Virus record (IMG/VR): IMGVR_UViG_3300036770_003943
Coordinates: 124,001 to 188,000 of that record
Strand: one strand, 5' to 3'
DNA length: 64,000 nucleotides
A model generated the notes under the pieces. It searched no databases. It was given only the letters and a program-made list of their open reading frames with translations, and was not told the DNA's origin. Both the position numbers and the translations under genes were made by a program. This document shows, piece by piece, positions 20,401 through 45,375 of the stretch. How positions within the stretch are numbered: the stretch's first letter is position 1; each line of letters starts with the position of its first letter.

Positions 20401-23400
20401 GGGACAGGACTACGATTTTATCAGTGAAGGTAACTATTATACCGCAATTGAATTTGATGCTTCATTGGATGGAAATACAGTTAAAGTTTTACAATGGAAC
20501 AAAGACTTTGACAGTCAGATTCCTGCTAGCTTGGCTAAAATTGGATTAGCGCCTATTTACAGACCCGAAATATATTTAGATACAACCAATGGTTATCGAT
20601 ATCTAGTAAGACATGACGGCACACGCTATTATCTAGAAGATGGTGTTGATGTGAACAATTATCCATCCAATCTTGTTGAACAATACTTATTTGAATATGA
20701 AAAAGCAGTGTTCAGCAGCATTGCTTATGATATTGAGAACAATGGTTTTACTAATTTAATAACCAGTATGCCGGGATATTTTAGAACTAAAGATAAGCTC
20801 TATAATGCTGCCAGACAAACTGTTATAAACGAATTTAGAAAATGGCAATTAGAAAATAACATTTATACAATGCCTAATACAACCTATGACAGCGGGGATG
20901 ACTTTACTAAAATTTATCAATTGGGAACCGGAGACGATGACAGTGTAATAATAGGCTCATGGAGATTAATTTATAAATTCTTATACGATACAGATAGACC
21001 TCATAGTCATCCATGGGAAATGATGGGCTATACTATCAAACCAATTTGGTGGGATACGCATTACAATTGGACAGACAGCACTAAGCGCAGCAATTTGATT
21101 CGAGCCCTTAGAGTTGGTAATTTTACTGAACCTACTAACAAATTAGTAAATCCGGATTTAAGCAGAATCAGAGATATTACTGTTCCTGAAACTTTTCCAG
21201 TAGACACATTAGGTAATCTTTTACCTCCTACTAGTTTGTCTTGGCTGCCTGCCATTGAATTAGATAGTGATACCATGTGGAGTCCGGGCAACTACGGTCC
21301 GTATGAACAAGTATTTTCTAATACCAATCATGGTCTAGCAGCATGGTCGAGACAGTTATTTTTATTGAATCCAACACAGTATGTCAATAATAATTGGGTA
21401 CCTGGTCAAATTAAATCTAATGCTTGGGGACAACGTATAGACATATCAACTGGATTTTGGAATCAAGGTACTATTAATCACTATTATCATAGACAGTTAG
21501 TTACAGGACAGGACACTGACATACCTCTTAATAGTGAAGAATGGGGCGGTGCTTTAGTAGTTGAAGGCGAATTAGCTTCAGGTGTTGTTAGTCCTTTATT
21601 TTCTGCTGAAGTTACGCCAATTTACACTCCAATGGAACCTACCATACTAAATGGGTACTATGTTGATGGTAGTGTATCTGAAAATGTAATTAGAGATCTC
21701 AATGTAGAAGTTAGTGTATATACTGCAGGCATTGAAAGTCTCATGGTTGAATTTTGTGTATTGTATAATAAAGATTATGCTACTGAAATTATCAGCAAGT
21801 TTAATAATCTTGTTGTAAACAAAGAATTTTTACTCAATGGGTTTACTAATAAAGATAATGTAAGAATTGAAAGTACTAGTATAAACAGTCAAAGGCAAAC
21901 ATTGTTTGTTCCTGAAGAAAGTTATAGTGTACGGACGGTTAAACATTATCCTCACAAAGAAATGTTTTTCTCCGGCATAAGAATTATTTGGGATGGTAAT
22001 GAATATAGTTTAAATGGCTTTGCCAACGAATATGGATTATTTCCGTATTTTAGTCCATCACCAACATCACCAACAGCTACAAGACAAATAGGAGAATCGA
22101 GTATCAAGGAAAAGCTGTATTACAATACTAGTTCGATTAATTATATTCCTTACGGTGCTAGTTTTACTAATAGACAAGAAATTTATGATTTCTTAATAGG
22201 CTACGGAAAGTATTTAGAAAATCAAGGATTTGAGTTTAATGAAGTTGAAGGCTCGGACATAAGAAATTGGCAGTTAAGTGCTAAACAGTTTATATTTTGG
22301 AGTAATGATTTACTTGCTCCTGGAAACTATATTGACCTTAATCCTTTCGCTGACGTTATTCAATTAGTTAATCAACCCGGCCAATTGGAAAATCTTGAGG
22401 GGACTAACGAAAATGTCGGTCAAATTGTGAATAGATCAAATCGAGCTTTATTTGGCAAAGACTTATTGGTTTCTCGCAATGATGATTATATTACTATCAG
22501 GCCGAAGCTAAAAGAAAACAGCATATATGGTATCAAGTTAACCTTTGTCGTATACGAAACTGTGGTACACTTAGATAGTACAAGTATTTTCAATGACAAC
22601 TATTTTGTACCAAGCCAAAGCACCAGTAAAAGAAGTTTTGTTATTGGTGGTAAACGTAGCCAAGATTGGTCAGGAAGATACTTTGTTCCTGGTTATGTTT
22701 TCAACGGCGCAAATTTATTACCGAACTATGACAGTATGTCGGAAGTGGGTCGTAATTTACTTGATATTGAAAATGTTGTTTTCGACCAAACTATTCTTGG
22801 TGCCAGTAGAAATCAATTTGGTCTAAATAGAAATAGTGAACTAAGACAGCTATTCTTAGAAGAAGACAACGAAATATTGTTTAAAAACAGTATAACTTAT
22901 AATAAAGGTACAGTACAGGTATTCAATAGTCTGAATCCATTGACACATAAAGATGGTAGTAGTACTCGCGCCTATGAAGAATATATGGTACGCACCGGCG
23001 AAGTTGGTAATACCAAAAATATAGAGTATTTTGAGTTTGAATTATACAACGACGATATTACAGAAAATAATCAAGTAATTAAGTTTATTTCTGATGGAGA
23101 CACTGAGGTTAGTAATAGAATATTGTATGTTAAAGATAGCAGCGAACGCTGGGTTCATAAGCCAATTAATGTCGATCTACGATTTAATACATATTCCGGT
23201 CAATTAGCTGCCTTAGATAAAAATAGCCCTATAATTGAAGGCGATACTACACTAATAGTTGATAATCTAGATCAGCTATCAAAAATATATGATAAGTTTG
23301 TAGATTTATGGAGTATTCCAGCTTATAGCGCTACAATTAGCTATAAAACCAATGACCAAGTAAGAATCAATGGTAGACTTTATTATGCTATAACCACTGT

Positions 23401-26053
23401 TAGTCCAAATACATGGACTAACAACAGTGATAAATTTACTGAAATTGGAGAACCTAGTTTGCCTAATATCTTTGTCAAGGACTACACAATTAAAAATCCT
23501 GATATTAGTCTAACCGGATCTGGTATATGTGATCCAGGTACTTGGGCTGGAACTTGGCAAGTCCTACAAACGACTGATAGGAATGTTGCTATAACTGAAA
23601 TATGTCCAGGAATTGATGACACTAACCGTGCTAGAGTAACTTGTAATAAGGAACATAAATTAACCATTGGTGATTATGTCTTACTCATTAATGCAGATGG
23701 AGACAGTACTAGCGCAAACGGTATTTGGCGTGTAACTGGTTTGGAAACAGGCAACGCTACACAATTTTATATTGATACAAGAATAGTAAACAACATAACC
23801 AGTGGAAAACTGTTTACTTTTAAGCCCGTACGATTCCGAAACCTTACAGAACTAAACTTAGCTACTGGAAGTTCAGCTGACACGTATGGCTATAGCTGGA
23901 AAAAGAAATATAATCCTTTTACTAATGCCAAAGGAGATACTGTAATTCCTCAAATTAGTACACCTAGCGGATACAACAATACTTGGCCAATAGCCATAAT
24001 ACAAGATACCGCACAGTGTGGTTACTATAGAGTCTATGTAGTCTATACTCAAGGGACGAGTGTAAACAAAGCTATAGCTAAAGAAGACAGTGCTATAGTA
24101 GATCCAAGTAATATTGAACATCTTATCATATATGATTATGCTGCTAATATGACTTTGGCTAAGGTTGAATTATATGATCCAAAAAAACTATATCTACCTC
24201 AGGTGTTAAAAGATGATATAGATATTATAGGTCGTGTAGACCCAGCACGATATAATAGAACTAGCGATCCAAATAAGAGCGTGTATACTAGTCTAGGATG
24301 GTATGAAGAATTTGTAGGACGCCGTTGGTGGGATACTAGCACTATGATTTACAATGATTACGATCATGGACCTGATTTAACTAAAGCACAGTACTGGGGC
24401 ACAGTAATTGAAAACACCACCGCTGATGTTTATGAATGGACTAAGAGCACAGTACACCCCAGTCAGTGGCAAAAACTAGTAGCACAAGGTACAGAAGTAT
24501 TCGGAGAAACTGCCAGCGGTACAGCCTATGTTGAACGTGTACAAGGCGTAGATTATTACCATTGGGTGGAAGAAGTAGATTATCTAAACGGACGTAATTT
24601 TATTGTTTACTATTTTTGGGTAAAAGATAAAAATATTATACCAGTTGAAAGTAAACATAAAAGAATTTATAGCACTGGTCAATTAGGAAACGCTCTAATT
24701 AATCCAAGTAGTATTGGATTGCCATGGTACGCTCCTATAGGCACTGATGCTATTGTAGTAAAAGGCATCAAGCAGTATTTAAACAACTCTAGCACAGTGG
24801 TTCAAATTAAGAAAAAAATCAAAGGCAATGATAAGCATCACCAGTGGGTGTTTGTCAGTGAAGAAAATACTGCCGAAACTATTCCGCAATGGCTACATGT
24901 TAGACTACGAGACAGTATAGCAGGACAAATTGTCTATAATAGAACAGCAGCTTACACTAATTACTCAGCGACAGAAATTTATAGTCAAGGTAGTATTGTC
25001 AAGTACTCGGGAAATTTTTATGGCTGTAAAGTTAATATGACTTCGCCAGCTGGATCATTCAACCTTAGCCAATGGCAATTATTGACTGCTGTATATGAAA
25101 TGACTGGATCATTGATAGGTACTATCGACATAGAAGTCACAGATCCTCTGCGTGTATATTTTAAAGTTAGTAAAAGTGTGCCAAATTTAGTTGACCTACA
25201 TCCTTATAATAGACTAGGAAATACTGTACGTCCTTACATACAAAGTTGGTTCATGGATGTGCTAGAAGCTAGACGTACTATGATCAAACGGTTAAATGAA
25301 ATCATGATCAATATTGACTTGATTAGTCAACCAAATTGGGGGCTAACTGCTTTAAACAATGCTATGTATGCCATTGACGGAGAAACTTTAGATATGACTA
25401 CTTTTTGGTCTTATTCAGATTATCGAAGTGAAGACTATGATTCTGGCATTGTAGTAGGTTATTCTGTTTCAACATTACCTGAAATGTATACGCTGCCAGC
25501 TGTTGCGGGCAGCTATATTAGAGTTAATTCTGGCATGACTGAATATACCATATATGAAAAAATAGCAGACGGTAGTTACAAGGTAGTATACAGAAAAAAT
25601 GGTACAGTACAGTTTAGTGAACTACTATACAGTAACTTAGGTTACAGTGGATGGGATACAGCAGTTTGGGATAGTACACGAATTACTTGGGATTTTAATT
25701 TAAATTCTGTATTTTTTGTATTACTAAATTCTTTAAGAACAGAAATATTCATTGGTCGATATCAAAAATATTATAGCAGTATAATGTGTACTATGCTAAG
25801 ATATGTTCTCAGTGAACAGGTTAATGTTGATTGGTTGACTAAATCCAGTACTATTGAACCAATTAATCTAGCCGGCAGCAATTTGGCTAATAGAGATACT
25901 TTAACTAGAGATGAGATTACTGTATTAAGCACATTTTATACCAGTGTTAAAAGTTTCAGAGATAAACTTCGTGGAGGCACAGTAAATAAATCCAGTGAAG
26001 AAAATGCTGATTTTGACATAACAGAAACACTAACTATCACAGATATTACATAA
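17447..26053 (+). CDS. Very large virion structural protein (2868 aa), probable gp7-like baseplate wedge component
   Basis: Directly follows gp6; Trp/Asp motifs (WDSEVWD, GWDTAVWD); two CBM5/12-like segments; no intein signature recognised. Confidence 0.6.
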   Translation: MSRQVRKPAEQQATKVKNINLLPAVLATDPNKKMLDSTVDLMTSKGQLIPFRETFGLRTASNKTTEFFRQETDPVRKESTGNISLISKSSTDEYLGKASYLDIENYLRVKGCELTDGVLLDKNINVLDLPINSSKLTDYHFYYWVPNTLPYCRLHFTEASGGGNKFSIINDLLYKPFATIVDDLTGRPLTLHTGMVVYFTGFIDTAYKTTDLDNPLLYYVIGVGESINLIAVSSFDRRIPYAYKVKRNWDSDDSLNFPPPINWDSEVWDGSEIIAGEPEYIVQDRYSSNANHWQMTDNWYHISVIRTVATFLNISAGEIAKAQYKATRPIISFFRGTKLYNWPNTQISEVKSLLPGQLSDYTGQVNLQDQYGYTFVNNDRVVFENTSGVYAISNVSTGATFTLIVNSSNLDGVLVTANSSIQFYRCIYKNSKWIFAQNKLSKNQTPLYEFYVSDGTHLESFNETNYRGGIILGYKEGSVTDTVLDIDIEISSIDFDLIDETNSSAISPNQIKFITDIDKEFHYYDSVSGEKLAIVGPYGYRYNSRIVPFYQPRSGLDFTKQIQDLVYEQSETTTWSAEITPPAQGFDRIHIFHDSQSNLKFYFEIQGYGLIRFSSRRGVHIFEQVLPLISGGRVEIVCHDLPFAVTFFRSDLVNNLTRPIAIGSPYVLNNGITNGVIELDLSLTIDPGSGSVYNIIGAEDTRLFIRYGSSTWKTAIVKNINNWNFIQNVFFKDDSNPLYNEYDFTIGDVYDNTGSLSYNSKIIEDSGIRKKLNDKEKICVKSIIEYPIAKTAPLSLTRNPLNEKLSTINYFSIYQHATDVKANSTNIRKYVDPELILTTSSLGGGTLIKHNDPISKFAIMTTNMPFDFGDVIIKQGKHYDLFLNKLKFELANIINSTTLSSLSSLDVLSLAIARIYRSMTNSTGFWRHSNMLGWGEQTGNYVEQLHVISSSSRTCYLWDKLLPIPHRAGKELLTHIIYDNKILLRGQDYDFISEGNYYTAIEFDASLDGNTVKVLQWNKDFDSQIPASLAKIGLAPIYRPEIYLDTTNGYRYLVRHDGTRYYLEDGVDVNNYPSNLVEQYLFEYEKAVFSSIAYDIENNGFTNLITSMPGYFRTKDKLYNAARQTVINEFRKWQLENNIYTMPNTTYDSGDDFTKIYQLGTGDDDSVIIGSWRLIYKFLYDTDRPHSHPWEMMGYTIKPIWWDTHYNWTDSTKRSNLIRALRVGNFTEPTNKLVNPDLSRIRDITVPETFPVDTLGNLLPPTSLSWLPAIELDSDTMWSPGNYGPYEQVFSNTNHGLAAWSRQLFLLNPTQYVNNNWVPGQIKSNAWGQRIDISTGFWNQGTINHYYHRQLVTGQDTDIPLNSEEWGGALVVEGELASGVVSPLFSAEVTPIYTPMEPTILNGYYVDGSVSENVIRDLNVEVSVYTAGIESLMVEFCVLYNKDYATEIISKFNNLVVNKEFLLNGFTNKDNVRIESTSINSQRQTLFVPEESYSVRTVKHYPHKEMFFSGIRIIWDGNEYSLNGFANEYGLFPYFSPSPTSPTATRQIGESSIKEKLYYNTSSINYIPYGASFTNRQEIYDFLIGYGKYLENQGFEFNEVEGSDIRNWQLSAKQFIFWSNDLLAPGNYIDLNPFADVIQLVNQPGQLENLEGTNENVGQIVNRSNRALFGKDLLVSRNDDYITIRPKLKENSIYGIKLTFVVYETVVHLDSTSIFNDNYFVPSQSTSKRSFVIGGKRSQDWSGRYFVPGYVFNGANLLPNYDSMSEVGRNLLDIENVVFDQTILGASRNQFGLNRNSELRQLFLEEDNEILFKNSITYNKGTVQVFNSLNPLTHKDGSSTRAYEEYMVRTGEVGNTKNIEYFEFELYNDDITENNQVIKFISDGDTEVSNRILYVKDSSERWVHKPINVDLRFNTYSGQLAALDKNSPIIEGDTTLIVDNLDQLSKIYDKFVDLWSIPAYSATISYKTNDQVRINGRLYYAITTVSPNTWTNNSDKFTEIGEPSLPNIFVKDYTIKNPDISLTGSGICDPGTWAGTWQVLQTTDRNVAITEICPGIDDTNRARVTCNKEHKLTIGDYVLLINADGDSTSANGIWRVTGLETGNATQFYIDTRIVNNITSGKLFTFKPVRFRNLTELNLATGSSADTYGYSWKKKYNPFTNAKGDTVIPQISTPSGYNNTWPIAIIQDTAQCGYYRVYVVYTQGTSVNKAIAKEDSAIVDPSNIEHLIIYDYAANMTLAKVELYDPKKLYLPQVLKDDIDIIGRVDPARYNRTSDPNKSVYTSLGWYEEFVGRRWWDTSTMIYNDYDHGPDLTKAQYWGTVIENTTADVYEWTKSTVHPSQWQKLVAQGTEVFGETASGTAYVERVQGVDYYHWVEEVDYLNGRNFIVYYFWVKDKNIIPVESKHKRIYSTGQLGNALINPSSIGLPWYAPIGTDAIVVKGIKQYLNNSSTVVQIKKKIKGNDKHHQWVFVSEENTAETIPQWLHVRLRDSIAGQIVYNRTAAYTNYSATEIYSQGSIVKYSGNFYGCKVNMTSPAGSFNLSQWQLLTAVYEMTGSLIGTIDIEVTDPLRVYFKVSKSVPNLVDLHPYNRLGNTVRPYIQSWFMDVLEARRTMIKRLNEIMINIDLISQPNWGLTALNNAMYAIDGETLDMTTFWSYSDYRSEDYDSGIVVGYSVSTLPEMYTLPAVAGSYIRVNSGMTEYTIYEKIADGSYKVVYRKNGTVQFSELLYSNLGYSGWDTAVWDSTRITWDFNLNSVFFVLLNSLRTEIFIGRYQKYYSSIMCTMLRYVLSEQVNVDWLTKSSTIEPINLAGSNLANRDTLTRDEITVLSTFYTSVKSFRDKLRGGTVNKSSEENADFDITETLTITDIT

Positions 26054-26098: not shown

Positions 26099-26680
26099 AT
26101 GCCACAAACAATGAACCTATCAATTGAAGGACATGTCAAAATTGTTGATCTAACAGCAAATCGAGTGTTATTCGAAGGGCATAACGCCATCAACTCTGAA
26201 ACAATGAGTATAGTTATTGCCAACATGTTGAAAGGAAACCTAAGTAATTACATCAGCGAATTACATATTGGCAATGGCGGCACAGTAATCGACGAAGACG
26301 GTAATATCACATATAAGGATGTTGTTGAAAACTTAGAATTAGGGACCCTAGCTGAGTTGTATAATCCATTATACTATAAGATAGTAGATGAATTAGATAC
26401 TGCTGCCAATGATGATCCAACACGTAATTTCTTGTCAGTTGTTCATAGTGAGGGTCTTAGCTATACAGATTTGACAATTACCTGTACCTTGGAAGAAGAT
26501 CAGCCCAGTTTACCAGGTAGCAGTGCAGGCGAAGTAATATTCAATGAACTAGGATTAAAAAATCGCAATCGTACAGGCCTAAACTCGGGATATTTACTTA
26601 GTCATGTAGTATTTGAGCCAGTTACTAAGAATGCTGGTAGAGTTGTTCAAATTGTTTATACTCTACGAATACGGTTATAG
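26099..26680 (+). CDS. Virion structural protein (baseplate/fibre-junction type)
   Basis: EGHVKI.D...H.NAI, G.GG and 'FNELGLK...LLSHVVF.PV.K...R..QI.YTLRI' pattern seen in myophage baseplate regions. Confidence 0.55.
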   Translation: MPQTMNLSIEGHVKIVDLTANRVLFEGHNAINSETMSIVIANMLKGNLSNYISELHIGNGGTVIDEDGNITYKDVVENLELGTLAELYNPLYYKIVDELDTAANDDPTRNFLSVVHSEGLSYTDLTITCTLEEDQPSLPGSSAGEVIFNELGLKNRNRTGLNSGYLLSHVVFEPVTKNAGRVVQIVYTLRIRL

Positions 26681-26693: not shown

Positions 26694-26714
26694 TAACATA
26701 AAGGAATTGAGCAG

Positions 26715-27641
26715 ATGGCATATGATGTAACTAAAACAGATGGAACTAGACTAACCATAGTCGCAGATCGTACCATAGATACAACTAGTCCTATCAAATT
26801 AGTCGGTAAAAACTACGCAGGCTACGGAGAAATAATGGCTGAAAATCTAGTTCAATTATTAGAAAATTTCAGTAATCCCTCGGCACCTGCTAACCCTATA
26901 ATAGGACAATTATGGTATAACAGCAGTCTTGGTATTTTAGGTGTGTATACTTCGGGCGGGTGGGCACCTATAGGCGGCCTGGGCATAATTGGCGGCAGCG
27001 TAACAGGATTCAGCACTGCTACTATTAAAGATACTGGTGGAGTATTTCATCAGGCTATAAAAATTCGTGTTAACAGTGTCAATGTTGCTATTATTAGCAG
27101 CGATGCAGGAACCTACACACCGGCATTGGAAACAGGATTACAAAGTGCTTTCCCTACCATTGGACAAGGTATTAATTTAAATCAAAGCGGTACTGCTGAT
27201 GTAGGCGAAGAAGCAGGTGGAAACTTTAAAATCCGTGGACGAGCAGTAGAAGCTGAATTTGCTGATATGGCAGAAATTTACCTAAGCGACACGGAGTTGG
27301 TTCCAGGAAATCTAGTTAAACTAGGTGGCCAAGCAGAGATTACTAAAACTGAATGCGAATTCGATGATGAAATTTTTGGAGTGATCAGTACAGCTCCAGG
27401 ATTTTTGTTAAACGCTAAAGAAAAATTTACTGAACTAGCTTATCCAGTAGCTCTTAAAGGTCGTGTTCCTTGTTTGGTCACAGGCCCAGTTAAAAAAGGT
27501 GAGCGCATTGTAGCCAGCAGTATACCAGGTGTTGGTATGGCAGCTGAACGTTATGATCCTCGAGCAATTATTGGTAGAGCGATTTCAGCAAAAGCACATC
27601 AGGGCCTGGGCACTATTGAATTAGCAGTAGGTAATAAATGA
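26715..27641 (+). CDS. Tail-fibre-type protein with C-terminal intramolecular-chaperone (Peptidase G2/S74-like) domain
   Basis: N-terminal LVGKNYAGYGE...ENLVQLLENF..P.NP..GQLWY; C-terminal ADMAE.Y..D....PG..V..GG..EIT...GVIST.PG...PVALKGRVPC. Confidence 0.7.
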   Translation: MAYDVTKTDGTRLTIVADRTIDTTSPIKLVGKNYAGYGEIMAENLVQLLENFSNPSAPANPIIGQLWYNSSLGILGVYTSGGWAPIGGLGIIGGSVTGFSTATIKDTGGVFHQAIKIRVNSVNVAIISSDAGTYTPALETGLQSAFPTIGQGINLNQSGTADVGEEAGGNFKIRGRAVEAEFADMAEIYLSDTELVPGNLVKLGGQAEITKTECEFDDEIFGVISTAPGFLLNAKEKFTELAYPVALKGRVPCLVTGPVKKGERIVASSIPGVGMAAERYDPRAIIGRAISAKAHQGLGTIELAVGNK

Positions 27642-28609
27642 CCATTGGTGTTGGTAAAAAGGTTTCGGCCAGCGATTTTAATTCATTGGTAATTCAGACC
27701 AATAAGATTTTCTCCGATAATTATCCTAACGTAGTCCCCCCTACAAATACTACAGAAAAGAATAATCAAAGTTTTGGATGGGGAAATTCGGAAGCTAATA
27801 TCATTACAGCAGGGCAAAAAATTACAGCCGCATCAATGAATCAATTGGTACATAGGCTAAACATAGCCAGTGATCATACTGGTGGAGTATATGAGCTTAC
27901 TCCAGTAATACAAGGACAAAAAATTACAGCGGCAATTTGGACAGATGTTCAAACAGTAATAGCATCAGTCACTCCAAACAAAAATTTGGCAGGATCAGGA
28001 CAAACAGCTCTAACTACACTAGGCTCATTGACTAGAGTTGGTAGTTTTAGCACCACATTAACCTACACTGTAAATATTGATTTTGCTGATTATGATCGTG
28101 CTAGATATTTCTTTAATAGCGGCAGTGAAATTAGATTAAGCCTTAGTAAAACTGGAGGAGGTACTACTGATAATGATTGGCAGTCAGTCTATAATCGATT
28201 TGGTGTAGTAAAGCTAGGCGTAGCCAATACCTTAAGCACCAGCTCTAATGTAATTAGTGAAGGCAAAGGTTTTCTCGATCTTAACAGTTCGGAACAGTTG
28301 TTGCTTACTTGTAATGCGGTAGCTGGGGGTTACGGTTATGGCTATGGCTATGGCTACGGTTATGGCTACGGTTACTATGGTTCAGCTAGAAATATTAAAG
28401 TATACGGCAGAATTATAGCTACGGGTGTAAACTATGTCACTGGCCCGGTTAGATTAATCATGAGAACTACTCTTTCAACACTGGATACAGCTACAGCAAC
28501 AGGAACTCATGTGCTTAGTATCGTTAGCAACAAGGCCACTAATAAAACACAAGGTGGTGTCACATTCAGTATAACTCAACCAACATATTCAGGCAGTGTA
28601 GCTGTTTAA
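27638..28609 (+). CDS. Virion structural/fibre-associated protein with a (Gly-Tyr)8 insertion
   Basis: Repeated 'GQKITAA' motif, RYFFNSGSEIR block; contains GG(YG)7YYG. Confidence 0.6.
   Translation: MTIGVGKKVSASDFNSLVIQTNKIFSDNYPNVVPPTNTTEKNNQSFGWGNSEANIITAGQKITAASMNQLVHRLNIASDHTGGVYELTPVIQGQKITAAIWTDVQTVIASVTPNKNLAGSGQTALTTLGSLTRVGSFSTTLTYTVNIDFADYDRARYFFNSGSEIRLSLSKTGGGTTDNDWQSVYNRFGVVKLGVANTLSTSSNVISEGKGFLDLNSSEQLLLTCNAVAGGYGYGYGYGYGYGYGYYGSARNIKVYGRIIATGVNYVTGPVRLIMRTTLSTLDTATATGTHVLSIVSNKATNKTQGGVTFSITQPTYSGSVAV
28328..28381 (+). repeat. In-frame 6-nt tandem repeat GGYTAY x8, encoding (Gly-Tyr)8-Tyr-Gly
   Basis: GGT TAC GGT TAT GGC TAT GGC TAT GGC TAC GGT TAT GGC TAC GGT TAC TAT GGT; units vary only at synonymous positions. 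Confidence 0.95.
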
Positions 28610-28625
28610 TTGCGTTTTACTATCA

Positions 28626-28631
28626 TAAATA
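28626..28631 (+). promoter_or_regulatory. Putative late promoter heading the GT/radical-SAM cluster
   Basis: TAAATA, then AAACTAGTATATAAT and a GGAG SD before ATG 28661. Confidence 0.55.
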
Positions 28632-28660
28632 GATTAAACTAGTATATAATGGAGTTCTGA

Positions 28661-29014
28661 ATGGATGACAAGCTAAAAGCAGCTTTGGAATTTAGTAACT
28701 ATAGACTTACGCTAAACAATCAAAAACAAAACCTTAAGCAACGTATGATAACCATGTTAACCATTGGTTATGCCAGTGCGTTGTTTACAGCTCGTCCTGA
28801 GCTTATTGTATTTGTCAAACAGTTAGTAGACTCAAATGTAGAAAAATTTGTTCTATTAGATGATAATGATAATCCTGTTTTGATCAGTGACTTAGCGGAT
28901 TTTCATAGTAAATTAATCAGTGCTTATTCCGAAGCTATGAATGAATATTACACCGAATCACAAAATCTAAAAAAACACCGCGACACAAAAAGTTTAATTG
29001 GAATAAATGGCTAA
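28661..29014 (+). CDS. Hypothetical protein, possibly fibre-assembly chaperone-like
   Basis: 117-aa helical ORF with SD; first gene of the cluster. Confidence 0.65.
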   Translation: MDDKLKAALEFSNYRLTLNNQKQNLKQRMITMLTIGYASALFTARPELIVFVKQLVDSNVEKFVLLDDNDNPVLISDLADFHSKLISAYSEAMNEYYTESQNLKKHRDTKSLIGING

Positions 29015-29903
29015 CATGGACAAGGGTGTTTTATTGATTGCCTATAATAATGACTATATTGCCTACGAAAAGTTAGCAGCATTAGCAGCGAGATCTGTCA
29101 AACAAAATATGTTGGTTAATCATGTTACATTGCTAACAGATACTCCTACTTTTGCTGCGGTCAAGAGAGAATTCAGTGAATCGGAAATACTAGACACATT
29201 TGATCATATTATTGTAGAAGATATAAAACATGAACCAAACAGTCGAGCTCATAGAGATAGCCCATGGTACGAATTTTTAACACAGTTTAATAACAAAAAC
29301 AAACACAGCATATTTGAAAAAAGTCCGTATCGTCAAACTTTAATGATCGATGTTGATTATTTTATCGGCAATAATAGCTTAGACGCAGTATTCGACACTG
29401 ACTACGAACTAGCCATGTACAAAGACGCAATCAGTGTAAGAAACTATCAGCCTAGAATCTGGGAACGAAAGCTTCAACCGAATGGAATTGATATGTGGTG
29501 GAGTACCGTGATATATTGGCGCAATGATAGTGAAACTGCTCGATTATTTTTTGATTTGTGGCAACATGTCAAAGAAAACTATCAATACTATAAATGGGTA
29601 TACAAATTTCCAGGCGCTTTATTCAGAACAGACTATGCTGTTAGCATAGCCAGTCATATCTTAAACGGTCAAATTGGCCACGGACTGATACAAGAATTAC
29701 CAGGCCGTACTATGCGGTTCAGTGAACAAATTGATGATATTGTGGAGTTTTCTAGCTTGAATGACTATGTTTTACTTTGTCCTGATCCAAAAGAATTATG
29801 GAAAAATATTTGTAGCCGAATACGTAGAGAAAACGTACATTTAATGAACAAAATGGCCATACTCAGGCACTATCATAAATTAAAAGAACTAGCTTATGAA
29901 TGA
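29007..29903 (+). CDS. Nucleotide-diphospho-sugar transferase (GT-A fold, GT8-like)
   Basis: GVLLIAYN start, SPY..TLMIDVDY (DxD), WSTVIYW, RTDYAVSIA.H. Confidence 0.65.
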   Translation: MANMDKGVLLIAYNNDYIAYEKLAALAARSVKQNMLVNHVTLLTDTPTFAAVKREFSESEILDTFDHIIVEDIKHEPNSRAHRDSPWYEFLTQFNNKNKHSIFEKSPYRQTLMIDVDYFIGNNSLDAVFDTDYELAMYKDAISVRNYQPRIWERKLQPNGIDMWWSTVIYWRNDSETARLFFDLWQHVKENYQYYKWVYKFPGALFRTDYAVSIASHILNGQIGHGLIQELPGRTMRFSEQIDDIVEFSSLNDYVLLCPDPKELWKNICSRIRRENVHLMNKMAILRHYHKLKELAYE

Positions 29904-30738
29904 AGGTTATTTAATCATTGGTGCTAACAAAGACACAGTTAGGCAAACCAATTTGTTAATCAGTAGCATACGCTATAATGATCCCACACGTCCAGTAGCA
30001 GTAGCTACACAAGACAAATCTATACAAAAAGAATTTACTGCTGACACAGTAGTTGTTGTACCTTATGAAGATGATATTACCACTGTGTTTAAATCTTATC
30101 TTTTAAGTCCTTATGAAAAAACCATAGCATTTCAAACTAATCAACTGCTAACAGATTTTACACCAAGTGTTTGGGAAAATCTAAGAGGTATGAATAGCAT
30201 AGTTATTTTGAAAACAAGACATAGCCACTGTATGTCAGCAATTGATCCAATGGTCTACTATAAATCATCAACTGAACAAAAAAGTTTTTCCACACATAGT
30301 TTAATTAATGCGATATATTTTAACAAAGAACAAGGATCAGATTATGTGTTTGGTTTAGCTGTAGTAATTGCCAGTAATTATGATCAAAACTTGTTAATCG
30401 ACTATTTCAGTAACAAAGAAAATAGCATGCCTGCTTTTCCTAAGTATATATGGCCTGAATGGTTAATGAGTTTGTTTTACCAATGTTTAGAATACAAAAT
30501 TGTCAAGTATGACTTTGTTAGACTAATAGACCTACGTCGACGAGAAATGATTGATCAACAAGACGATTGGAATAGCAGTAATTGGCAGGATTTTTTAACT
30601 TATTGGGTAACACAAGACGGACTAGTTAAAATAGAAAATTTTATACAACTAGGTCTTATTCAGTTTAGAGGGGACGAATGGTTAGATGATCGATACATCA
30701 AACATCTAGAATCTAGATTTGCCAATGGAAAATCTTGA
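29896..30738 (+). CDS. Degenerate paralog of the preceding GT8-like protein (no DxD)
   Basis: EGYLII start and SPYEKTIAFQTNQ align with SPYRQTLMIDVD. Confidence 0.5.
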   Translation: MNEGYLIIGANKDTVRQTNLLISSIRYNDPTRPVAVATQDKSIQKEFTADTVVVVPYEDDITTVFKSYLLSPYEKTIAFQTNQLLTDFTPSVWENLRGMNSIVILKTRHSHCMSAIDPMVYYKSSTEQKSFSTHSLINAIYFNKEQGSDYVFGLAVVIASNYDQNLLIDYFSNKENSMPAFPKYIWPEWLMSLFYQCLEYKIVKYDFVRLIDLRRREMIDQQDDWNSSNWQDFLTYWVTQDGLVKIENFIQLGLIQFRGDEWLDDRYIKHLESRFANGKS

Positions 30739-31696
30739 ACTAGAAGATGGCGAATTTGATGTACAAAAAACTATTCTTAGGACTCGATCTCCTAAGAATA
30801 TAACGTACTATATTGAGTATGATAAACTAACCGGCGGTGTGCTGACTATTAGCCCAGAGGTTATTCAAACAGATAGTCCTCGAACTCTGGTACTAGAACA
30901 ACCAGCAAATGAAATAATAACTAATGTATTTGGCAGTAAAGTGCCCATGGCCAGCCTGCGAGTTGTCTACGATCAAAAAACAAAAACTAAATTACTAACC
31001 AAGCAGTCGGATTTGGTTTACAATGAGTTCGCTTATAGTCATCCAGATAGTGAGCTTAAACAATTTGTACACTTGAATGTTGATGTCGTATCCAAAAGAA
31101 TAAGAGTTAAATTACGCTCAGATCAATTTAAAGAACAAATAACCAATGAACTTTTAAACGAAACAGAAATAGCACAATACCCAGATTATCTAGACGTTTA
31201 TTGCTATAATACCTATGATTCTAGTATTTTATATGACAAGCTATCCATTAGATTAAGAGACTTGTTTATGGGTAAGGATATCTTTTTCAACTGCTCTTGG
31301 CTACCAAATACTAAATCAGACTTTGCGAACTACAATTTTGTCTACTATGGCAAGGGCTTAAAGATAACTGTAAGCTGTAACGATATTTATGAAACTCAAA
31401 GACGTCAAGTACACAAACCATTAATTGTCTATAAACAAAGAAGAAAAACCATTATGCTTCAAAGTCTCATGAGTAATCATGAATTTTATTATATAAACAA
31501 CGCAATAACTTTTTACTGTATGAAAGAATCAGACCCTGACATCTTGCTAGATACCATTACAGTTACTAGTGATCAATTAAACGATTTTAACATGATAAAG
31601 ATGTCAGTTAGCTTCACTGAACCCGTAAAAATAATAAGTAATTATTCCCATATACACATGGAACACACAGATGAAAATTCCTATTACCAATTTTGA
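30719..31696 (+). CDS. Hypothetical protein (325 aa)
   Basis: Long ORF translationally coupled within the cluster. Confidence 0.7.
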   Translation: MPMENLELEDGEFDVQKTILRTRSPKNITYYIEYDKLTGGVLTISPEVIQTDSPRTLVLEQPANEIITNVFGSKVPMASLRVVYDQKTKTKLLTKQSDLVYNEFAYSHPDSELKQFVHLNVDVVSKRIRVKLRSDQFKEQITNELLNETEIAQYPDYLDVYCYNTYDSSILYDKLSIRLRDLFMGKDIFFNCSWLPNTKSDFANYNFVYYGKGLKITVSCNDIYETQRRQVHKPLIVYKQRRKTIMLQSLMSNHEFYYINNAITFYCMKESDPDILLDTITVTSDQLNDFNMIKMSVSFTEPVKIISNYSHIHMEHTDENSYYQF

Positions 31697-32639
31697 TATA
31701 GTTTTTATCAGTTATGATGAACCTAACGCCGATAAAAACTACAGTGATTTGTTAAACAAAGCACCATGGGCTAAAAGAATTCATGGAGTAAAAGGGTTCG
31801 ACAGCGCACATAAAGCAGCAGGGCAGGCTGCTGAAACAGATAGATTTATTACAGTAGATGCTGACAATATAGTACATGATGAGTTTTTTAATGTAGAATT
31901 AGAAATGGATAAGATTGGTCGACATGATACTATAAGCTGGGCAGGTAAGAATATGATAAATGGATTAGTTTATGGAAACGGCGGCATAAAAATTTGGAGC
32001 AAGAATGTAGTTGAACAGATGAGAACTCATGAATTAGCCGACGACGATAAAAGTAAAGTAGATTTTTGTTGGGATATTTACTACCATCAAATGAATAATA
32101 TCTACAGTGATGTTTACAATAATGCCAGTGCTTATCAGGCCTATAGGGCAGGATTTCGAGAAGGTGTAAAATTACTACTTGATGGAGGTCAACAAGTCGA
32201 TCCTGTCAACATACGAACTCTAGTTCATGATCGTAATTACAAAAGAGTCTTAGTATGGGCCAGTGTCGGATCAGATGTAGATAATGGTCTATGGGCTATG
32301 TATGGAACACGATTAGGCATACAAATGGCTAACTTTGATAAAAACTTTGATTTTACCTTGGTAAGAGATTTTGATTGGCACAGTGATTTTTGGAAACGAG
32401 AAATAGCTGACAAATTCAAAGGACAAGATGGTTTATGTAAGGGCACTGGATGGACTTATAGTATAGAAAAACTAAAACAGGAAATATACAAGCTAGGGCA
32501 AGATCTTAGAAATAGATTGGATTTAGAAATAGCTGAATTAGATCAAAACGGGAGTAGATTTTTCAAAGAGAGTTTTATCAATCCACCCAGACTGGGTGCA
32601 ATGGTAAAAGAATCACATGTAAATAATACCATAGCATGA
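31671..32639 (+). CDS. GT-A-fold glycosyltransferase-like protein, paralog 1 of 4
   Basis: FISYDEPNAD.NY, RIHGVKG..SAH, VDAD (DxD), NGLVYGNGGIK, FREGVK. Confidence 0.6.
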   Translation: MKIPITNFDIVFISYDEPNADKNYSDLLNKAPWAKRIHGVKGFDSAHKAAGQAAETDRFITVDADNIVHDEFFNVELEMDKIGRHDTISWAGKNMINGLVYGNGGIKIWSKNVVEQMRTHELADDDKSKVDFCWDIYYHQMNNIYSDVYNNASAYQAYRAGFREGVKLLLDGGQQVDPVNIRTLVHDRNYKRVLVWASVGSDVDNGLWAMYGTRLGIQMANFDKNFDFTLVRDFDWHSDFWKREIADKFKGQDGLCKGTGWTYSIEKLKQEIYKLGQDLRNRLDLEIAELDQNGSRFFKESFINPPRLGAMVKESHVNNTIA

Positions 32640-33583
32640 ATCACAACTATATTAAATTAGAACATAAAAATCCTGACAATCTAGATTGGTTCGTGGTCAA
32701 TTGGTGCTTGGGCAATGTCTGTAACTATAGTTGTAGTTACTGTCCAGAGTATCTACACAATTCTACCAAGCCTTGGCCCTTACCGGATGTCATAAAAAAG
32801 TTTATTATACAGATAAAGAATCATTTTTTTGACAAACAGATATATTTTGAATTTACCGGTGGCGAAGTTACCATGTACAAGCATTTTGAAAGCATAGCTA
32901 AATTTTGCCATAGTATAGGTATCAGAGTAGGTTTAATCAGTAACGGATCAAGGACCATAAGATATTGGCAAGAAAATAAACAGTATTTTGATCATATCTG
33001 CTTGAGCTTCCATAGCGAGTTTGCTGACGCCGATCATTTTGTAAATGTAGTAAAAACTGTACACATGGATGTGAAGACTCATGTCAACATCATGATGAAC
33101 CCAAATCATTTTGATCTAGGACTCAACGTAGCTAGACGATGTAGGGAATTAGGTAATCTCAGTCTTGCCCTACAACCTTTATTACATGATATGAATCGGG
33201 GTCTTTTTGAATATAGCGACAATCAAAAAACTGTTCTAGACAATCAATATGAACTAATTACTAAAAATATTCCTATCTATAAACAGTATGATTACTATCG
33301 TGGAGCCATGCGTAAAGTTCGAACAGATGGATCGAGTGAAATAGCCAATACCTACGATTTTATTAATGAAAAAAGCAATGACTGGAGTGGGTGGAATTGC
33401 TATGCTGGCCTTGAACAAATAGTAGTTGACACTGACGGAACTGTGTTTAGGGGATGGTGTAAGCAAGGCGGCGAAATAGGCAACATTCATGCTGAAGTAC
33501 ATTTGCCTGAACTGCCAGTATTGTGTGCCAGTACTAACTGTGCTTGTGGTCTAGATATTATGTGTACGAAAGAAAAGATATGA
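32636..33583 (+). CDS. Radical SAM protein with C-terminal Twitch/SPASM-like Cys cluster (rSAM 1)
   Basis: CNYSCSYC, TGGEV, SNGS; C-terminal WNCYAG...DG..WC...C...C.C..D. Confidence 0.9.
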   Translation: MNHNYIKLEHKNPDNLDWFVVNWCLGNVCNYSCSYCPEYLHNSTKPWPLPDVIKKFIIQIKNHFFDKQIYFEFTGGEVTMYKHFESIAKFCHSIGIRVGLISNGSRTIRYWQENKQYFDHICLSFHSEFADADHFVNVVKTVHMDVKTHVNIMMNPNHFDLGLNVARRCRELGNLSLALQPLLHDMNRGLFEYSDNQKTVLDNQYELITKNIPIYKQYDYYRGAMRKVRTDGSSEIANTYDFINEKSNDWSGWNCYAGLEQIVVDTDGTVFRGWCKQGGEIGNIHAEVHLPELPVLCASTNCACGLDIMCTKEKI

Positions 33584-34971
33584 CTGAACAGTTAGACATA
33601 ACTCAAACTATTTGTCGATATGCTTGGGATTACCCAGTGGTAAACTTCAGCAGACACGAGCTAAGAAACTGCTGTAGAACTTCGGGTTCCTACGTAAGTA
33701 AAGAAGATTTGGCTCTAGGCCCTGATTTGTTTAAAAAATTTAAGCCAATCATCGAAATTAAAACCGACCTCCTTCGAGGTATTAGATCTAGTCAATGCGA
33801 AACCTGTTGGATTACTGAAAGAGCTGGAAGTCAAAGTCCAAGACTTGGCTTTGAACATTTTGTATCATTGGTACAGAAAAAATACCCCAACTTAACTAGG
33901 CTAGAATTAGTAGAAAAACTTAAAAATCTTACTGACAGTGAGATTCAAGAGCTGGCTAATTGGGAAAGTCCTAATAGGATTGAAATCATGCTGAGTAACA
34001 CCTGTGATTTAAAATGTCTTTATTGTAATCATGTGTTCAGTAGCCAATGGGCAGCGGAAAAATTAAAGTATAGGGAAATAACTGACAATGAAATTCACAA
34101 GCCAATTTCCAACGAATTTGAATCAGTTTGGTGGGAATGGTTTCATAAATCAGCAGTCAAAACAGTCAAACATATTACATTTGTAGGTGGTGAACCTTTA
34201 CTTAACGAAAAAACTTATGAATGGCTAGATAGATTATTGAACTTCTATAATAATCAAACCGACTATACAGCTGACTTGTTTATTGTTACTAATTTTAATT
34301 GTACTGAAAAACTTTTTAATAGATTTATGAAATTCGTAGAGAGAATAGCTGATCCACAAAGTAAAATGGATTTAGGTATTGGTATTAGTTTTGAAAGTAT
34401 CGGCGACAAAAATGAATTTATTCGTACAGGATTAGACTGGGATAGATTTGATTCGAATATTAAAAAATTATTAGAATACCTTAGGGTAAACCAGGTATCT
34501 TGGGATAAAATTTTTATTAATGCTTTGCCTGCCTTTAATTGCCTTAGCCTAAGTGATTTACCAAACTATATTACCTACATAAGAAGTCTAAATGAAAAAT
34601 ATAGGTTAACCGACTTACCACGCAAACATAGACCTTCCTCTGGAATAGAAATAAGTTTTACTCACGTGGCTAATCCTGAAAGATTATCTCCTTTTATATT
34701 AACTAATGATTATATCAAACACATTGATCATGCTATTAATCTTGTCAAGGAATTAAACCAATTGGATATCTATAAAAGAGATTTTGTAAATTATCTGCTT
34801 ACACTAAAAGATGGCATCGTTAATAACAATGAAAAACTCGATAAGCAGGTCTATTTAAGAAAACGATTTATCGACGATATTACTCAAATCTCAGCAAGAA
34901 GAAATCTAGATTTACATTCTACATTTCCAGAGATGCAGGAGTTCTTTGATCTTTGTAAAAGCTATGCTTGA
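33580..34971 (+). CDS. Radical SAM protein with N-terminal Cys-rich domain (rSAM 2); start at MTEQLD
   Basis: N-terminal C..AW...CC...C..C; core CDLKCLYC, VGGEP, VTN. Confidence 0.9.
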   Translation: MTEQLDITQTICRYAWDYPVVNFSRHELRNCCRTSGSYVSKEDLALGPDLFKKFKPIIEIKTDLLRGIRSSQCETCWITERAGSQSPRLGFEHFVSLVQKKYPNLTRLELVEKLKNLTDSEIQELANWESPNRIEIMLSNTCDLKCLYCNHVFSSQWAAEKLKYREITDNEIHKPISNEFESVWWEWFHKSAVKTVKHITFVGGEPLLNEKTYEWLDRLLNFYNNQTDYTADLFIVTNFNCTEKLFNRFMKFVERIADPQSKMDLGIGISFESIGDKNEFIRTGLDWDRFDSNIKKLLEYLRVNQVSWDKIFINALPAFNCLSLSDLPNYITYIRSLNEKYRLTDLPRKHRPSSGIEISFTHVANPERLSPFILTNDYIKHIDHAINLVKELNQLDIYKRDFVNYLLTLKDGIVNNNEKLDKQVYLRKRFIDDITQISARRNLDLHSTFPEMQEFFDLCKSYA

Positions 34972-36674: not shown

Positions 36675-36675
36675 T

Positions 36676-45105: not shown

Positions 45106-45117
45106 TGTGTTTTGTGT

Positions 45118-45131
45118 GATAAATATTTATC
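45118..45131. promoter_or_regulatory. Perfect 14-bp palindrome carrying TAAATA on both strands (putative bidirectional late promoter)
   Basis: GATAAATATTTATC lies in the 41-bp gap between divergent starts 45105(-) and 45147(+). Confidence 0.55.
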
Positions 45132-45146
45132 TTAGTATATAATGAT

Positions 45147-45374: not shown

Positions 45375-45375
45375 T

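What the first reader, a model, noticed from the sequence alone, without database searches (positions are those of the whole stretch)
28328..28381. (Gly-Tyr)8 tract in the virion protein just upstream of the cluster: possible modification substrate
Seen: G(GY)8YG in an otherwise ordinary Thr/Ser-rich structural protein, ~280 bp before the cluster. Codons alternate GGT/GGC and TAT/TAC, so it looks maintained at protein level rather than being a fresh microsatellite expansion. Established: rSAM-SPASM spliceases (PlpX type) act on Tyr-Gly motifs, cyclophane-forming rSAMs cross-link aromatic residues, and Tyr can be O-glycosylated. Gly/aromatic-rich loops are also receptor-contacting in T-even gp38 adhesins. 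Inference: a multivalent acceptor loop for the neighbouring enzymes, or an aromatic adhesion/self-assembly strip.
Basis: partly seen in the sequence, partly recalled or inferred. Interest (0 to 1): 0.66.

Follow-up and report, generated by a model that had tools for sequence, protein, structure and literature searches.

The report
Gly-Tyr loop in phage baseplate protein
The run of eight Gly-Tyr pairs is real and is an old, conserved loop in a tail-baseplate protein family of uncultured jumbo phages, but it does not track the neighbouring radical-SAM and sugar-transferase genes, so it is more likely a sticky contact loop than an enzyme substrate.

Summary
Observation confirmed. ORF 27638-28609 (+), 323 aa, carries (GY)8 at residues 231-246 (nt 28328-28375), followed by YG. 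It is the only G/Y tract in the 231.8-kb phage record.

The protein belongs to a large, unannotated, virus-only family. A homolog in Pseudomonas phage PA5oct (gp360) is flagged as detected in virions by mass spectrometry. The gene lies at the end of a jumbo-myophage baseplate operon.

AlphaFold (pLDDT 92) gives an N-terminal helical domain and a C-terminal beta-sandwich. The tract is the only low-confidence loop, between two consecutive strands. G/Y-rich inserts sit at this same site in 136 of 197 relatives. Length and pattern vary, and codon usage is fully scrambled, so the tract is maintained at protein level.

The modification-substrate idea is not supported:
- On the family tree the tract maps to one deep split plus three secondary losses, and rSAM genes occur on both sides (18 of 43 rSAM-bearing loci lack the tract).
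- The putative glycosyltransferase block is near-universal regardless of tract.
- The five rSAMs that reach a curated family cut-off are N-terminal-twitch type, not splicease or cyclophane type.

Best reading: an exposed, Tyr-studded hairpin or loop acting as an adhesive contact surface. This function is inferred, not shown.

The parts
27638..28609 (+). Gene for the 323-aa G/Y-tract protein (P0001). It belongs to an unannotated, virus-only family homologous to PA5oct gp360.
   Evidence: ORF and translation. 174 homologs. No Pfam or PHROG hit. Family HMM hits PA5oct gp360 at E=1.5e-32. ESM Atlas nearest clusters are 100% viral.
28328..28381 (+). (GY)8 (28328-28375) plus YG. This is the only low-confidence loop of the model, lying between beta-strands 220-226 and 251-261.
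   Evidence: AlphaFold pLDDT is below 50 for residues 232-238 and 242-247, against a mean of 92. Same insertion site in homologs.
27638..27991 (+). N-terminal helical domain (residues 1-118) with three internal repeats of a 'G-x-K-I-T-A-x-x-x-N-x-L' helix.
   Evidence: Sequence, conserved columns, helices 11-25, 64-80 and 98-114.
27998..28606 (+). C-terminal beta-sandwich domain (residues 121-323) that carries the tract.
   Evidence: AlphaFold secondary structure. VIA-align gives only generic sandwich matches: Csp jelly-roll Z 7.6, galectins Z 5-6.
26715..27641 (+). Upstream 308-aa tail-fibre or gp10-like protein. Its stop overlaps the start of the G/Y gene.
   Evidence: PHROG tail fiber and virion structural hits, plus a weak Peptidase_G2 hit. 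phmmer hits PA5oct gp358 ('T4-like gp10') and gp359.
26099..26680 (+). 193-aa conserved baseplate-module protein.
   Evidence: phrog_11259 at E=1e-44. Homologs in PA5oct (gp357, MS-detected) and Atu_ph07.
17447..26053 (+). Giant 2868-aa virion structural protein that follows the gp6-like baseplate wedge gene (14007-17450).
   Evidence: phrog_10938 and phrog_10646. Same gene order in Atu_ph07 and PA5oct.
28661..29014 (+). 117-aa conserved protein of unknown function, immediately downstream in nearly all relatives.
29007..30738 (+). Two paralogous proteins of about 290 aa (298 and 280 aa) with an invariant DxD motif. Putative GT-A glycosyltransferases (a lead only).
   Evidence: hhalign A5 against A3 gives prob 99.6%, E=5e-24. 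D115 and D117 are invariant. Atlas feature lead to GT8/Mannosyl_trans3. No Pfam or PDB sequence hit.
30719..31696 (+). 325-aa protein of unknown function, detected only in the closest clade.
31671..32639 (+). 322-aa GT-A-fold putative glycosyltransferase. Paralogs lie at 34946-35710, 35682-36674 and 36649-37359.
   Evidence: AlphaFold pLDDT 83. Foldseek PDB hits are hyaluronan synthase, BcsA, SunS, PBCV-1 A64R and TarP at E 1e-4 to 1e-3, prob above 0.9. D63 and D65 invariant. Paralogy by BLAST.
32636..48510 (.). Cluster with nine radical-SAM genes: 32636-33583, 33544-34971, 38200-39372, 39369-40445, 40438-41847, 41840-43099, 43069-45105 (-), 46035-47201, 47149-48510.
   Evidence: Pfam Radical_SAM and SPASM hits. 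Five exceed the NCBIfam NF033640 N_Twi_rSAM cut-off.

Best explanation
The (GY)8 run is the local version of an ancient, family-wide G/Y-rich insertion. It sits between two consecutive beta-strands of the C-terminal beta-sandwich of a peripheral baseplate virion protein of an uncultured jumbo myophage (PA5oct gp360 family).

Shown:
- The tract is real and in frame.
- It is the only such tract in the genome.
- It lies at a fixed insertion site.
- It is kept G/Y-pure while synonymous sites are randomised.
- It varies in length and pattern between relatives.
- It arose or was lost at one deep split of the family.
- It is independent of rSAM and GT content.

Inferred: the insert protrudes from the sandwich as a flexible loop or two-stranded ribbon. 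In many relatives two GY blocks are separated by an Asn-Gly-type turn or by a 15-30-residue tip. It would present a row of Tyr side chains spaced by Gly.

I propose that it works unmodified as a low-specificity adhesive surface, with Tyr stacking and hydrogen-bonding to host envelope glycans during initial or baseplate-level attachment. Gly supplies backbone flexibility, and length changes by occasional slippage tune reach and avidity.
For: - Reality and uniqueness of the tract.
- Same site in homologs: 136 of 197 non-identical members have at least one G/Y block, and 67 have two or more blocks split by NGGNS, NGGD or NC turns or by 15-30-aa inserts.
- Variants such as (GGY)n and GEYGG at the same site show that composition, not an exact motif, is what is kept.
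- Codon usage in tracts equals the rest of the gene: GGT/GGC/GGA/GGG 0.38/0.31/0.28/0.04 against 0.41/0.28/0.27/0.04, and TAT/TAC 0.67/0.33 against 0.67/0.33. Perfect period-6 DNA runs are only 9-35 nt.
- The model has pLDDT 92 and pTM 0.90, with the tract as the only segment below 50, flanked by strands 220-226 and 251-261.
- Position in the operon: gp6-like wedge, giant protein, 193-aa protein, gp10-like protein, then this gene.
- The PA5oct homolog carries the ESI-MS/MS note, which in that study marks proteins found in virions.
- From general knowledge, not tested here: Tyr and Gly dominate minimalist antibody paratopes and many carbohydrate-binding sites.
Against: - No direct evidence that the sandwich domain or the loop faces the host.
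- No solved homolog, and fold matches are generic (Z no higher than 7.6).
- Receptor-contact loops usually vary in composition, whereas this one stays G/Y. That fits a generic physical role, or a structural one, as well as it fits adhesion.
- The hairpin idea has only weak support. Block-length matching gives Spearman 0.08; the permutation test on mean |difference| gives p=0.003 but is not corrected for phylogeny. AlphaFold predicts no strands in the tract.
- Three lineages lost the G/Y blocks and the GY-minus half of the family does without them, so the tract is not essential to the protein.
- Oligomeric state could not be tested because complex prediction was unreachable.
Confidence: 0.42

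Rival explanations
1. Structural or self-assembly element. The G/Y hairpins of neighbouring subunits, or a partner protein, zip together through Tyr stacking. They would form part of an inter-subunit sheet or barrel that locks the protein onto the baseplate, with no role in host contact.
For: - The two-residue periodicity suits beta-strands with all Tyr on one face.
- Paired G/Y blocks are separated by turn-like NGG, NC or NGN linkers.
- The strictly conserved composition is more typical of a structural constraint than of a receptor loop.
- Low monomer pLDDT is expected for segments that fold only in an assembly.
Against: - Half of the family and three secondary-loss lineages lack the blocks yet keep the same domain and gene order. 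PA5oct gp360 enters virions without a tract.
- Tract length ranges from about 6 to more than 50 residues, and the period switches between 2 (GY) and 3 (GGY). That is hard to reconcile with a fixed interface.
- The homo-oligomer prediction could not be run.
Confidence: 0.2
2. Post-translational modification substrate. Tyr residues of the tract would be cross-linked or spliced by the radical-SAM enzymes, or O-glycosylated by the adjacent GT-A-like enzymes, during virion maturation.
For: - The gene order (G/Y-family gene, 117-aa gene, GT-like genes, rSAM genes) holds in relatives down to about 27% identity.
- The 322-aa neighbour has a GT-A fold whose matches include peptide- and capsid-glycosylating enzymes SunS and PBCV-1 A64R.
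- A naive 2x2 test is nominally positive (25/2 against 18/8, Fisher p=0.039).
- From general knowledge: Tyr O-glycosylation (glycogenin, S-layer proteins) and rSAM chemistry on Tyr-Gly motifs exist.
Against: - The association collapses on the tree. There is one deep GY+/GY- split with rSAMs on both sides, three secondary tract losses all keep rSAMs, and independent pairs show no co-change.
- 18 of 43 rSAM-positive loci lack the tract.
- Tract length against rSAM count gives rho 0.14 (p 0.31), and against GT-like count rho 0.12.
- The GT-like block is present in tract-less relatives.
- There are nine rSAMs but only one G/Y tract in the genome.
- Five rSAMs are NF033640 N-terminal-twitch proteins. 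The best peptide-maturase hit (YhhB) scores 27.5 bits against a cut-off of 445.
- The tract is internal to a folded protein with no leader peptide.
- Of 94 other viral loci with (GY)6 or longer tracts, none has a homolog of these rSAMs in the fetched DNA.
Confidence: 0.1
3. Functionally neutral low-complexity expansion. A permissive surface loop tolerates slippage-generated G/Y repeats that drift in length without selective value.
For: - Length and pattern are highly variable.
- The blocks were lost at least three times without loss of the gene.
- AlphaFold sees no structure there.
- G-X dipeptide arrays are common in other viral ORFs.
Against: - Tracts stay almost purely G/Y across lineages that share only 30-55% identity elsewhere, while their synonymous sites are at equilibrium. 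This indicates purifying selection on the residues rather than recent slippage.
- Perfect DNA repeats are short.
- The tract is retained in 27 of the 30 sequences on the GY+ side of the family tree.
Confidence: 0.15

Closest known systems
Pseudomonas phage PA5oct gp360 (YP_010678854.1), a hypothetical protein detected in virions by ESI-MS/MS
   Same: Homologous over residues 3-228 (family HMM E=1.5e-32). It has the same position at the end of the baseplate operon, after the gp6-like wedge, the giant protein, the roughly 200-aa protein and the gp10-like proteins.
   Different: No G/Y tract at the equivalent site. It has a longer, different C-terminal part. The PA5oct genome has no Radical_SAM hit and no GT-like block downstream.
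Gly-rich motifs of T-even gp38 tail-fibre adhesins (Salmonella phage S16 gp38; Dunne et al. 2018, cited in PMC8409303)
   Same: A glycine-rich, aromatic-containing segment in a phage tail-associated protein. In gp38 such segments shape the receptor-binding tip.
   Different: gp38 motifs are Gly runs forming polyglycine-II helices in a three-layer sandwich. Here the repeat is a strict G-Y dipeptide inserted in a beta-sandwich. No sequence or fold match to gp38 appeared in any search. The gene is in the baseplate operon, not at a long-tail-fibre tip.
Spliceotide (PlpA/PlpX) and three-residue cyclophane RiPP precursors
   Same: Repeated Tyr-Gly or aromatic motifs close to several radical-SAM genes with auxiliary Fe-S domains.
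   Different: Those substrates are short leader-plus-core peptides. This tract is an internal loop of a folded 323-aa virion protein. The five rSAMs that pass a curated cut-off have an N-terminal twitch domain (NF033640), and none reaches a peptide-maturase cut-off. There is no co-variation.
High glycine-tyrosine structural and adhesive proteins (hair keratin-associated HGT proteins, plant Gly-rich wall proteins)
   Same: The same two-letter composition, used for Tyr-mediated packing or adhesion (general knowledge; HGT-KAP is mentioned in PMC8409303).
   Different: No homology. Those are whole low-complexity proteins, whereas this is a 16-50-residue insert in a globular domain.
Virion glycosylation systems (mycobacteriophage capsid and tail-tube glycosylation, Freeman et al. 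2023 as cited in PMC12619734; chlorovirus PBCV-1 A64R)
   Same: GT-A-fold genes encoded beside structural genes.
   Different: Known acceptors are C-terminal Ser/Thr-rich extensions or Asn of capsid proteins, not Tyr loops. No glycan evidence exists here, and the GT block does not depend on the tract.

Membership tests
PA5oct gp360-like baseplate-module virion protein family (unnamed) | Sequence homology across the N-terminal helical domain and the start of the beta-sandwich | tested here: met
   The HMM of 115 homologs hits PA5oct gp360 at E=1.5e-32, profile positions 3-228.
PA5oct gp360-like baseplate-module virion protein family (unnamed) | Position downstream of the gp6-like wedge, giant structural protein, roughly 200-aa protein and gp10-like protein | tested here: met
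   This order holds in the window, in PA5oct, and in nearly all of the 85 fetched metagenomic and viral loci where upstream DNA was available.
PA5oct gp360-like baseplate-module virion protein family (unnamed) | Physical presence in virions | not testable with these tools
   Known only for PA5oct, from the record note 'ESI-MS/MS' and its meaning in PMC7318152.
Spliceotide precursor / PlpX splicease system | Substrate is a short precursor with an N-terminal leader and C-terminal core bearing XYG motifs | tested here: not met
   The tract lies at residues 231-248 of a 323-aa protein that folds with pLDDT 92 on both sides.
Spliceotide precursor / PlpX splicease system | Cognate rSAM with C-terminal SPASM domain of the PlpX type (plus a PlpY partner) | tested here: inconclusive
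   Five rSAMs pass NF033640 with the twitch/SPASM hit N-terminal to the rSAM core. No PlpX-specific model was available, and the other four rSAMs reach no curated cut-off.
Spliceotide precursor / PlpX splicease system | Tyramine excision detectable in the product | not testable with these tools
   Needs MS/MS.
Three-residue cyclophane (YhhB/XyeB-type) RiPP system | rSAM/SPASM maturase of that family next to the substrate | tested here: not met
   The best hit is NF041707 YhhB at 27.5 bits against a cut-off of 445, for the 678-aa rSAM.
T-even gp38-type adhesin | Polyglycine-II sandwich built from Gly-rich motifs, detectable by sequence or fold | tested here: not met
   No gp38 chain appears among the Foldseek or VIA-align matches, or in the profile search of PDB sequences. 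The repeat here is a G-Y dipeptide.
Enzyme-substrate pair with the neighbouring rSAM/GT cluster (any chemistry) | Phyletic co-variation of tract and enzymes | tested here: not met
   Counts are GY+/rSAM+ 25, GY-/rSAM+ 18, GY-/rSAM- 8, GY+/rSAM- 2. On the tree there is one deep split plus 3 losses, all retaining rSAM. Independent pairs show no co-change, and length correlations are not significant. Caveat: contigs are fragments, so 'rSAM-' calls are unreliable.
GT-A glycosyltransferases (for the 322-aa neighbour) | GT-A fold with a DxD motif | tested here: met
   Foldseek prob 0.9-1.0 to GT2-type enzymes. D63-x-D65 is invariant in 25 homologs. The Pfam Glycos_transf_2 hit is only marginal (3 of 25 members, best E 0.011).

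The most novel reading that the evidence does not exclude
In the GY+ half of this phage family, the G/Y hairpin could be a dedicated multivalent acceptor on the virion surface for Tyr-directed chemistry. That chemistry could be O-glycosylation by the adjacent GT-A-like enzymes, or C-C/C-O cross-linking by the N-terminal-twitch radical-SAM enzymes. Tract-less relatives would use another acceptor. This would be the first rSAM- or Tyr-glycan-modified phage structural protein.
Probability: 0.08. Interest if true: 0.8.

Novelty: new variant of a known kind. Interest (0 to 1): 0.33.

Why it matters
The tract marks an abundant but unannotated baseplate-protein family of aquatic jumbo phages. It offers a simple handle for asking how these phages contact their hosts: a pure Tyr/Gly loop at a fixed site whose length varies.

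The analysis also separates two things that looked linked. The conserved block of GT-like and N-twitch radical-SAM genes next to the baseplate operon is a feature of the lineage in its own right. Its target is still unknown, and it should not be assumed to be this loop.

If the loop were nevertheless shown to be modified, it would open a new class of virion post-translational chemistry.

Tried and rejected
- megablast of 26000-34000 and tblastn of the protein against 50,697 phage records found nothing. tblastn with PA5oct gp360 finds only PA5oct-like phages, so no cultured phage with a G/Y tract was found.
- Pfam, PHROGs and a profile search of PDB sequences gave nothing for the G/Y protein. 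Foldseek against PDB had no hit at E of 0.001 or better. VIA-align gave only generic sandwich matches.
- Hairpin test by matching lengths of paired G/Y blocks: Spearman 0.08. The permutation test on mean |difference| gives p=0.003 but is not corrected for relatedness, so I treat it as weak.
- The naive Fisher association of tract with rSAM (p=0.039) is rejected as phylogenetic pseudo-replication. It also rests on unreliable negatives: L038 has rSAM genes just beyond the 10-kb horizon.
- T4-type late promoter TATAAATA: 3 matches against 10.7 expected, so no signal.
- The 298-aa family gave no Pfam or PDB sequence hit. Its GT assignment rests on a DxD motif and an Atlas feature lead only.
- PHROG scan of eight other viral G-X repeat proteins: uninformative.
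- Complex prediction (homotrimer of the protein) was unreachable in five tries, so there is no verdict on oligomeric state.
- The large representative-protein search was not used, because the word search already gave 174 relatives.

Full report
**1. The observation**

The window carries an ORF at 27638-28609 (+) that encodes 323 residues. Residues 231-246 are eight consecutive Gly-Tyr pairs (nt 28328-28375). A Gly-Gly precedes them and Tyr-Gly follows, up to nt 28381.

Gly codons alternate GGT/GGC and Tyr codons alternate TAC/TAT. Tandem Repeats Finder sees only an imperfect period-6/12 array with 84-87% matches. The protein is rich in Thr (41) and Ser (31).

I translated all six frames of the complete 231,776-bp virus record that holds the window, which lies at 124001-188000 of it. 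This is the only G/Y-rich stretch in that record.

**2. What the gene is**

The window is part of a jumbo myophage. Genes upstream match these functions:
- a gp25-like wedge protein;
- a gp5-like hub/lysozyme;
- a gp6-like wedge of 1147 aa (phrog_10646, E=6e-261);
- a 2868-aa virion structural protein.

The gp6-like protein is 36-41% identical to those of Agrobacterium phage Atu_ph07, Pseudomonas phage PA5oct and Rak2-like phages.

After the giant protein come three genes:
- a 193-aa protein (phrog_11259);
- a 308-aa protein with tail-fibre/virion PHROG hits;
- the G/Y protein, whose start overlaps the previous stop.

The G/Y protein itself has no Pfam or PHROG hit and no BLAST match in 50,697 phage records. 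It does have 174 metagenomic homologs, and its nearest ESM-Atlas clusters are 100% viral.

A profile of 115 homologs hits PA5oct gp360 at E=1.5e-32. gp360 lies at the equivalent position, after the gp10-like gp358 and gp359. So 'virion protein' is a reasonable inference by homology and position. It is not shown for this phage.

**3. Structure**

AlphaFold2 with the 115-sequence alignment gives a confident model (mean pLDDT 92.2, pTM 0.90). Residues 1-118 form a helical domain built from three repeats of a 'GxKITAxxxNxL' helix. Residues 121-323 form a beta-sandwich.

The only segments with pLDDT below 50 are 232-238 and 242-247, which is the tract. It lies between strands 220-226 and 251-261.

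Foldseek finds no solved structure at E of 0.001 or better. VIA-align gives only generic sandwich matches: the Csp jelly-roll at Z 7.6 and galectins at Z 5-6. A profile search of PDB sequences finds nothing.

**4. The tract across the family**

In the closest 26 homologs (39-59% identity), the same alignment position holds G/Y-rich inserts of varying length.

Among 197 non-identical family members, 136 have at least one pure G/Y block after residue 150, and 67 have two or more. In the window's clade the blocks are typically split by turn-like linkers such as NGGNS, NGGD, NC or NGN. In a more distant clade, two blocks flank a 15-30-residue insert.

Other variants at the same site are (GGY)n, with more than 15 repeats in L020, and GEYGG repeats. 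So composition is conserved rather than an exact motif.

Codon usage inside tracts of 36 loci is indistinguishable from the rest of the gene, and perfect period-6 DNA runs are only 9-35 nt. The tracts are therefore old and held by selection on the residues.

The two-block architecture suggests a two-stranded ribbon projecting from the sandwich. Support for this is weak: AlphaFold predicts no strands there, and block lengths match only loosely.

**5. Test of the modification-substrate idea**

The gene order is G/Y-family gene, 117-aa gene, genes of about 300 aa, then radical-SAM genes. It holds in five assemblies, reached from family members as little as 26% identical to P0001, and in most of the 80 IMG/VR loci. 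Adjacency is therefore real, but it is a property of the whole lineage.

I scored 53 non-identical loci that have at least 9 kb downstream for tract presence and for rSAM genes within 10 kb:

| | rSAM+ | rSAM- |
|---|---|---|
| GY+ | 25 | 2 |
| GY- | 18 | 8 |

I then built a tree of the family with the tract masked:
- The sequences fall into a GY- half (23 rows, 15 with rSAM) and a GY+ half (30 rows).
- The GY+ half contains three secondary losses (L018, L065, L025), and all three keep rSAM genes.
- The tract state changes about 4 times. Independent contrasts show no matching change in rSAM.

The nominal Fisher p of 0.039 reflects that single deep split. It also rests on unreliable negatives, because at least one 'rSAM-' contig has rSAM genes just beyond the 10-kb horizon and all contigs are fragments.

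Further points against the idea:
- Tract length does not correlate with the number of rSAM genes (rho 0.14) or GT-like genes (rho 0.12).
- PA5oct has the protein but no tract and no Radical_SAM hit. Atu_ph07 has four rSAM matches next to its baseplate module, but no family member in the fetched region.
- The window has nine rSAM genes, and five exceed the cut-off of NCBIfam NF033640, 'twitch domain-containing radical SAM protein'. In these the auxiliary-cluster domain is N-terminal to the rSAM core.
- No peptide-maturase model comes near its cut-off. The best is YhhB at 27.5 bits against 445.
- The tract is an internal loop of a folded protein, not a leader-plus-core peptide.
- A DNA-pattern scan of IMG/VR for (GY)6 found 117 in-frame tracts. 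Twenty-six are in this family. Ninety-one are in unrelated short ORFs with long G-[Y/D/S/N] dipeptide arrays. None of the 94 non-family stretches has a homolog of these rSAMs in the fetched DNA.

**6. The neighbours**

The 322-aa protein (31671-32639) and its three paralogs have a predicted GT-A fold. Foldseek matches include hyaluronan synthase, BcsA, the peptide S-glycosyltransferase SunS, the PBCV-1 capsid glycosyltransferase A64R and TarP. A DxD motif is invariant.

The 298-aa and 280-aa proteins are paralogs of each other (hhalign E=5e-24). They also carry an invariant DxD. Their glycosyltransferase assignment rests otherwise only on an Atlas feature lead.

These genes occur with or without the tract. 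They suggest a glycan-related function for the cluster as a whole, but its target is unknown.

Earlier work has noted T4-like marine viral genomes with up to 12 rSAM genes (PMC5332604) and Campylobacter phages with 11-12 (PMC2853527). Neither study assigned a function.

**7. Verdict**

The tract is best read as an exposed, Tyr-studded, Gly-spaced loop or ribbon on the C-terminal sandwich of a peripheral baseplate protein. It most likely serves as a generic adhesive contact, either with host surface glycans (my preferred reading, confidence about 0.4) or with neighbouring virion subunits (about 0.2). A neutral low-complexity expansion (about 0.15) and an enzyme substrate (about 0.1) are less likely.

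No experiment bears on any of these readings.

This is a modestly interesting, real feature. It is a new variant of the known theme of Gly/aromatic-rich loops in phage tail proteins, and it lies in a family with no annotation.

Noticed in passing
window 32636-48510: Nine radical-SAM genes lie in 16 kb. Five pass the NCBIfam NF033640 'N-terminal twitch' cut-off. GT-A-like paralogs are interleaved with them. Function and substrate are unknown. Similar clusters follow the baseplate operon in most relatives.
   Followed up: partly
window 29007-32639 and 34946-38200: Two families of putative GT-A glycosyltransferases have no Pfam hit at the gathering threshold. One comprises the 298-aa and 280-aa paralogs (hhalign E=5e-24). 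The other comprises the 322-, 330-, 254- and 236-aa paralogs, and the 322-aa member has a GT2-like predicted fold. At least one member of each family is present in almost every relative with enough downstream DNA.
   Followed up: partly
window 27638-27991: The N-terminal domain of the G/Y protein contains three internal repeats of a 'G-x-K-I-T-A-x-x-[FYW]-N-x-L' helix. This is a pseudo-threefold arrangement within one chain.
   Followed up: no
L089-L208 (IMG/VR), e.g. L163:6486-7184, L128:2348-3409: A separate, apparently widespread class of short viral ORFs consists largely of G-X dipeptide arrays (X = Y, D, S, N; e.g. ...GYGYGYGDGDGSGSG...). Some have a conserved C-terminal 'IKS(I/V)N...Y(I/V)VD' end. 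They are unrelated to this family and have no informative PHROG hit.
   Followed up: partly
L020:10001-11173, L049, L023, L081: At the same insertion site some relatives carry (GGY)n (more than 15 repeats in L020) or GEYGG repeats instead of (GY)n.
   Followed up: no
L064 and L083: Two tandem copies of the G/Y-family gene lie in one locus. Several GY- loci also carry three tandem copies of the 308-aa gp10-like gene upstream.
   Followed up: no
L007 (Agrobacterium phage Atu_ph07) 41855-43591 and record 116645-123042: This cultured jumbo phage has four radical-SAM matches a few kb downstream of its baseplate wedge and giant-protein operon. No G/Y-family member was found in the fetched region.
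   Followed up: partly
window 12810-13352 and 10647-11939 (-): An HNH endonuclease gene and an ATP-dependent DNA ligase gene interrupt the baseplate gene series.
   Followed up: no
L013:8003-10972: My ORF caller reads the family member here as a 989-aa frame, open from far upstream. This could be a fusion with the preceding gp10-like gene or a start-codon artefact.
   Followed up: no
L006:15105-17211: In one tract-less relative, DHFR, thymidylate synthase and a sugar-nucleotide enzyme (CTP_transf_like / MannoseP_isomer / Cupin_2) sit between the GT-like block and the rSAM genes.
   Followed up: no
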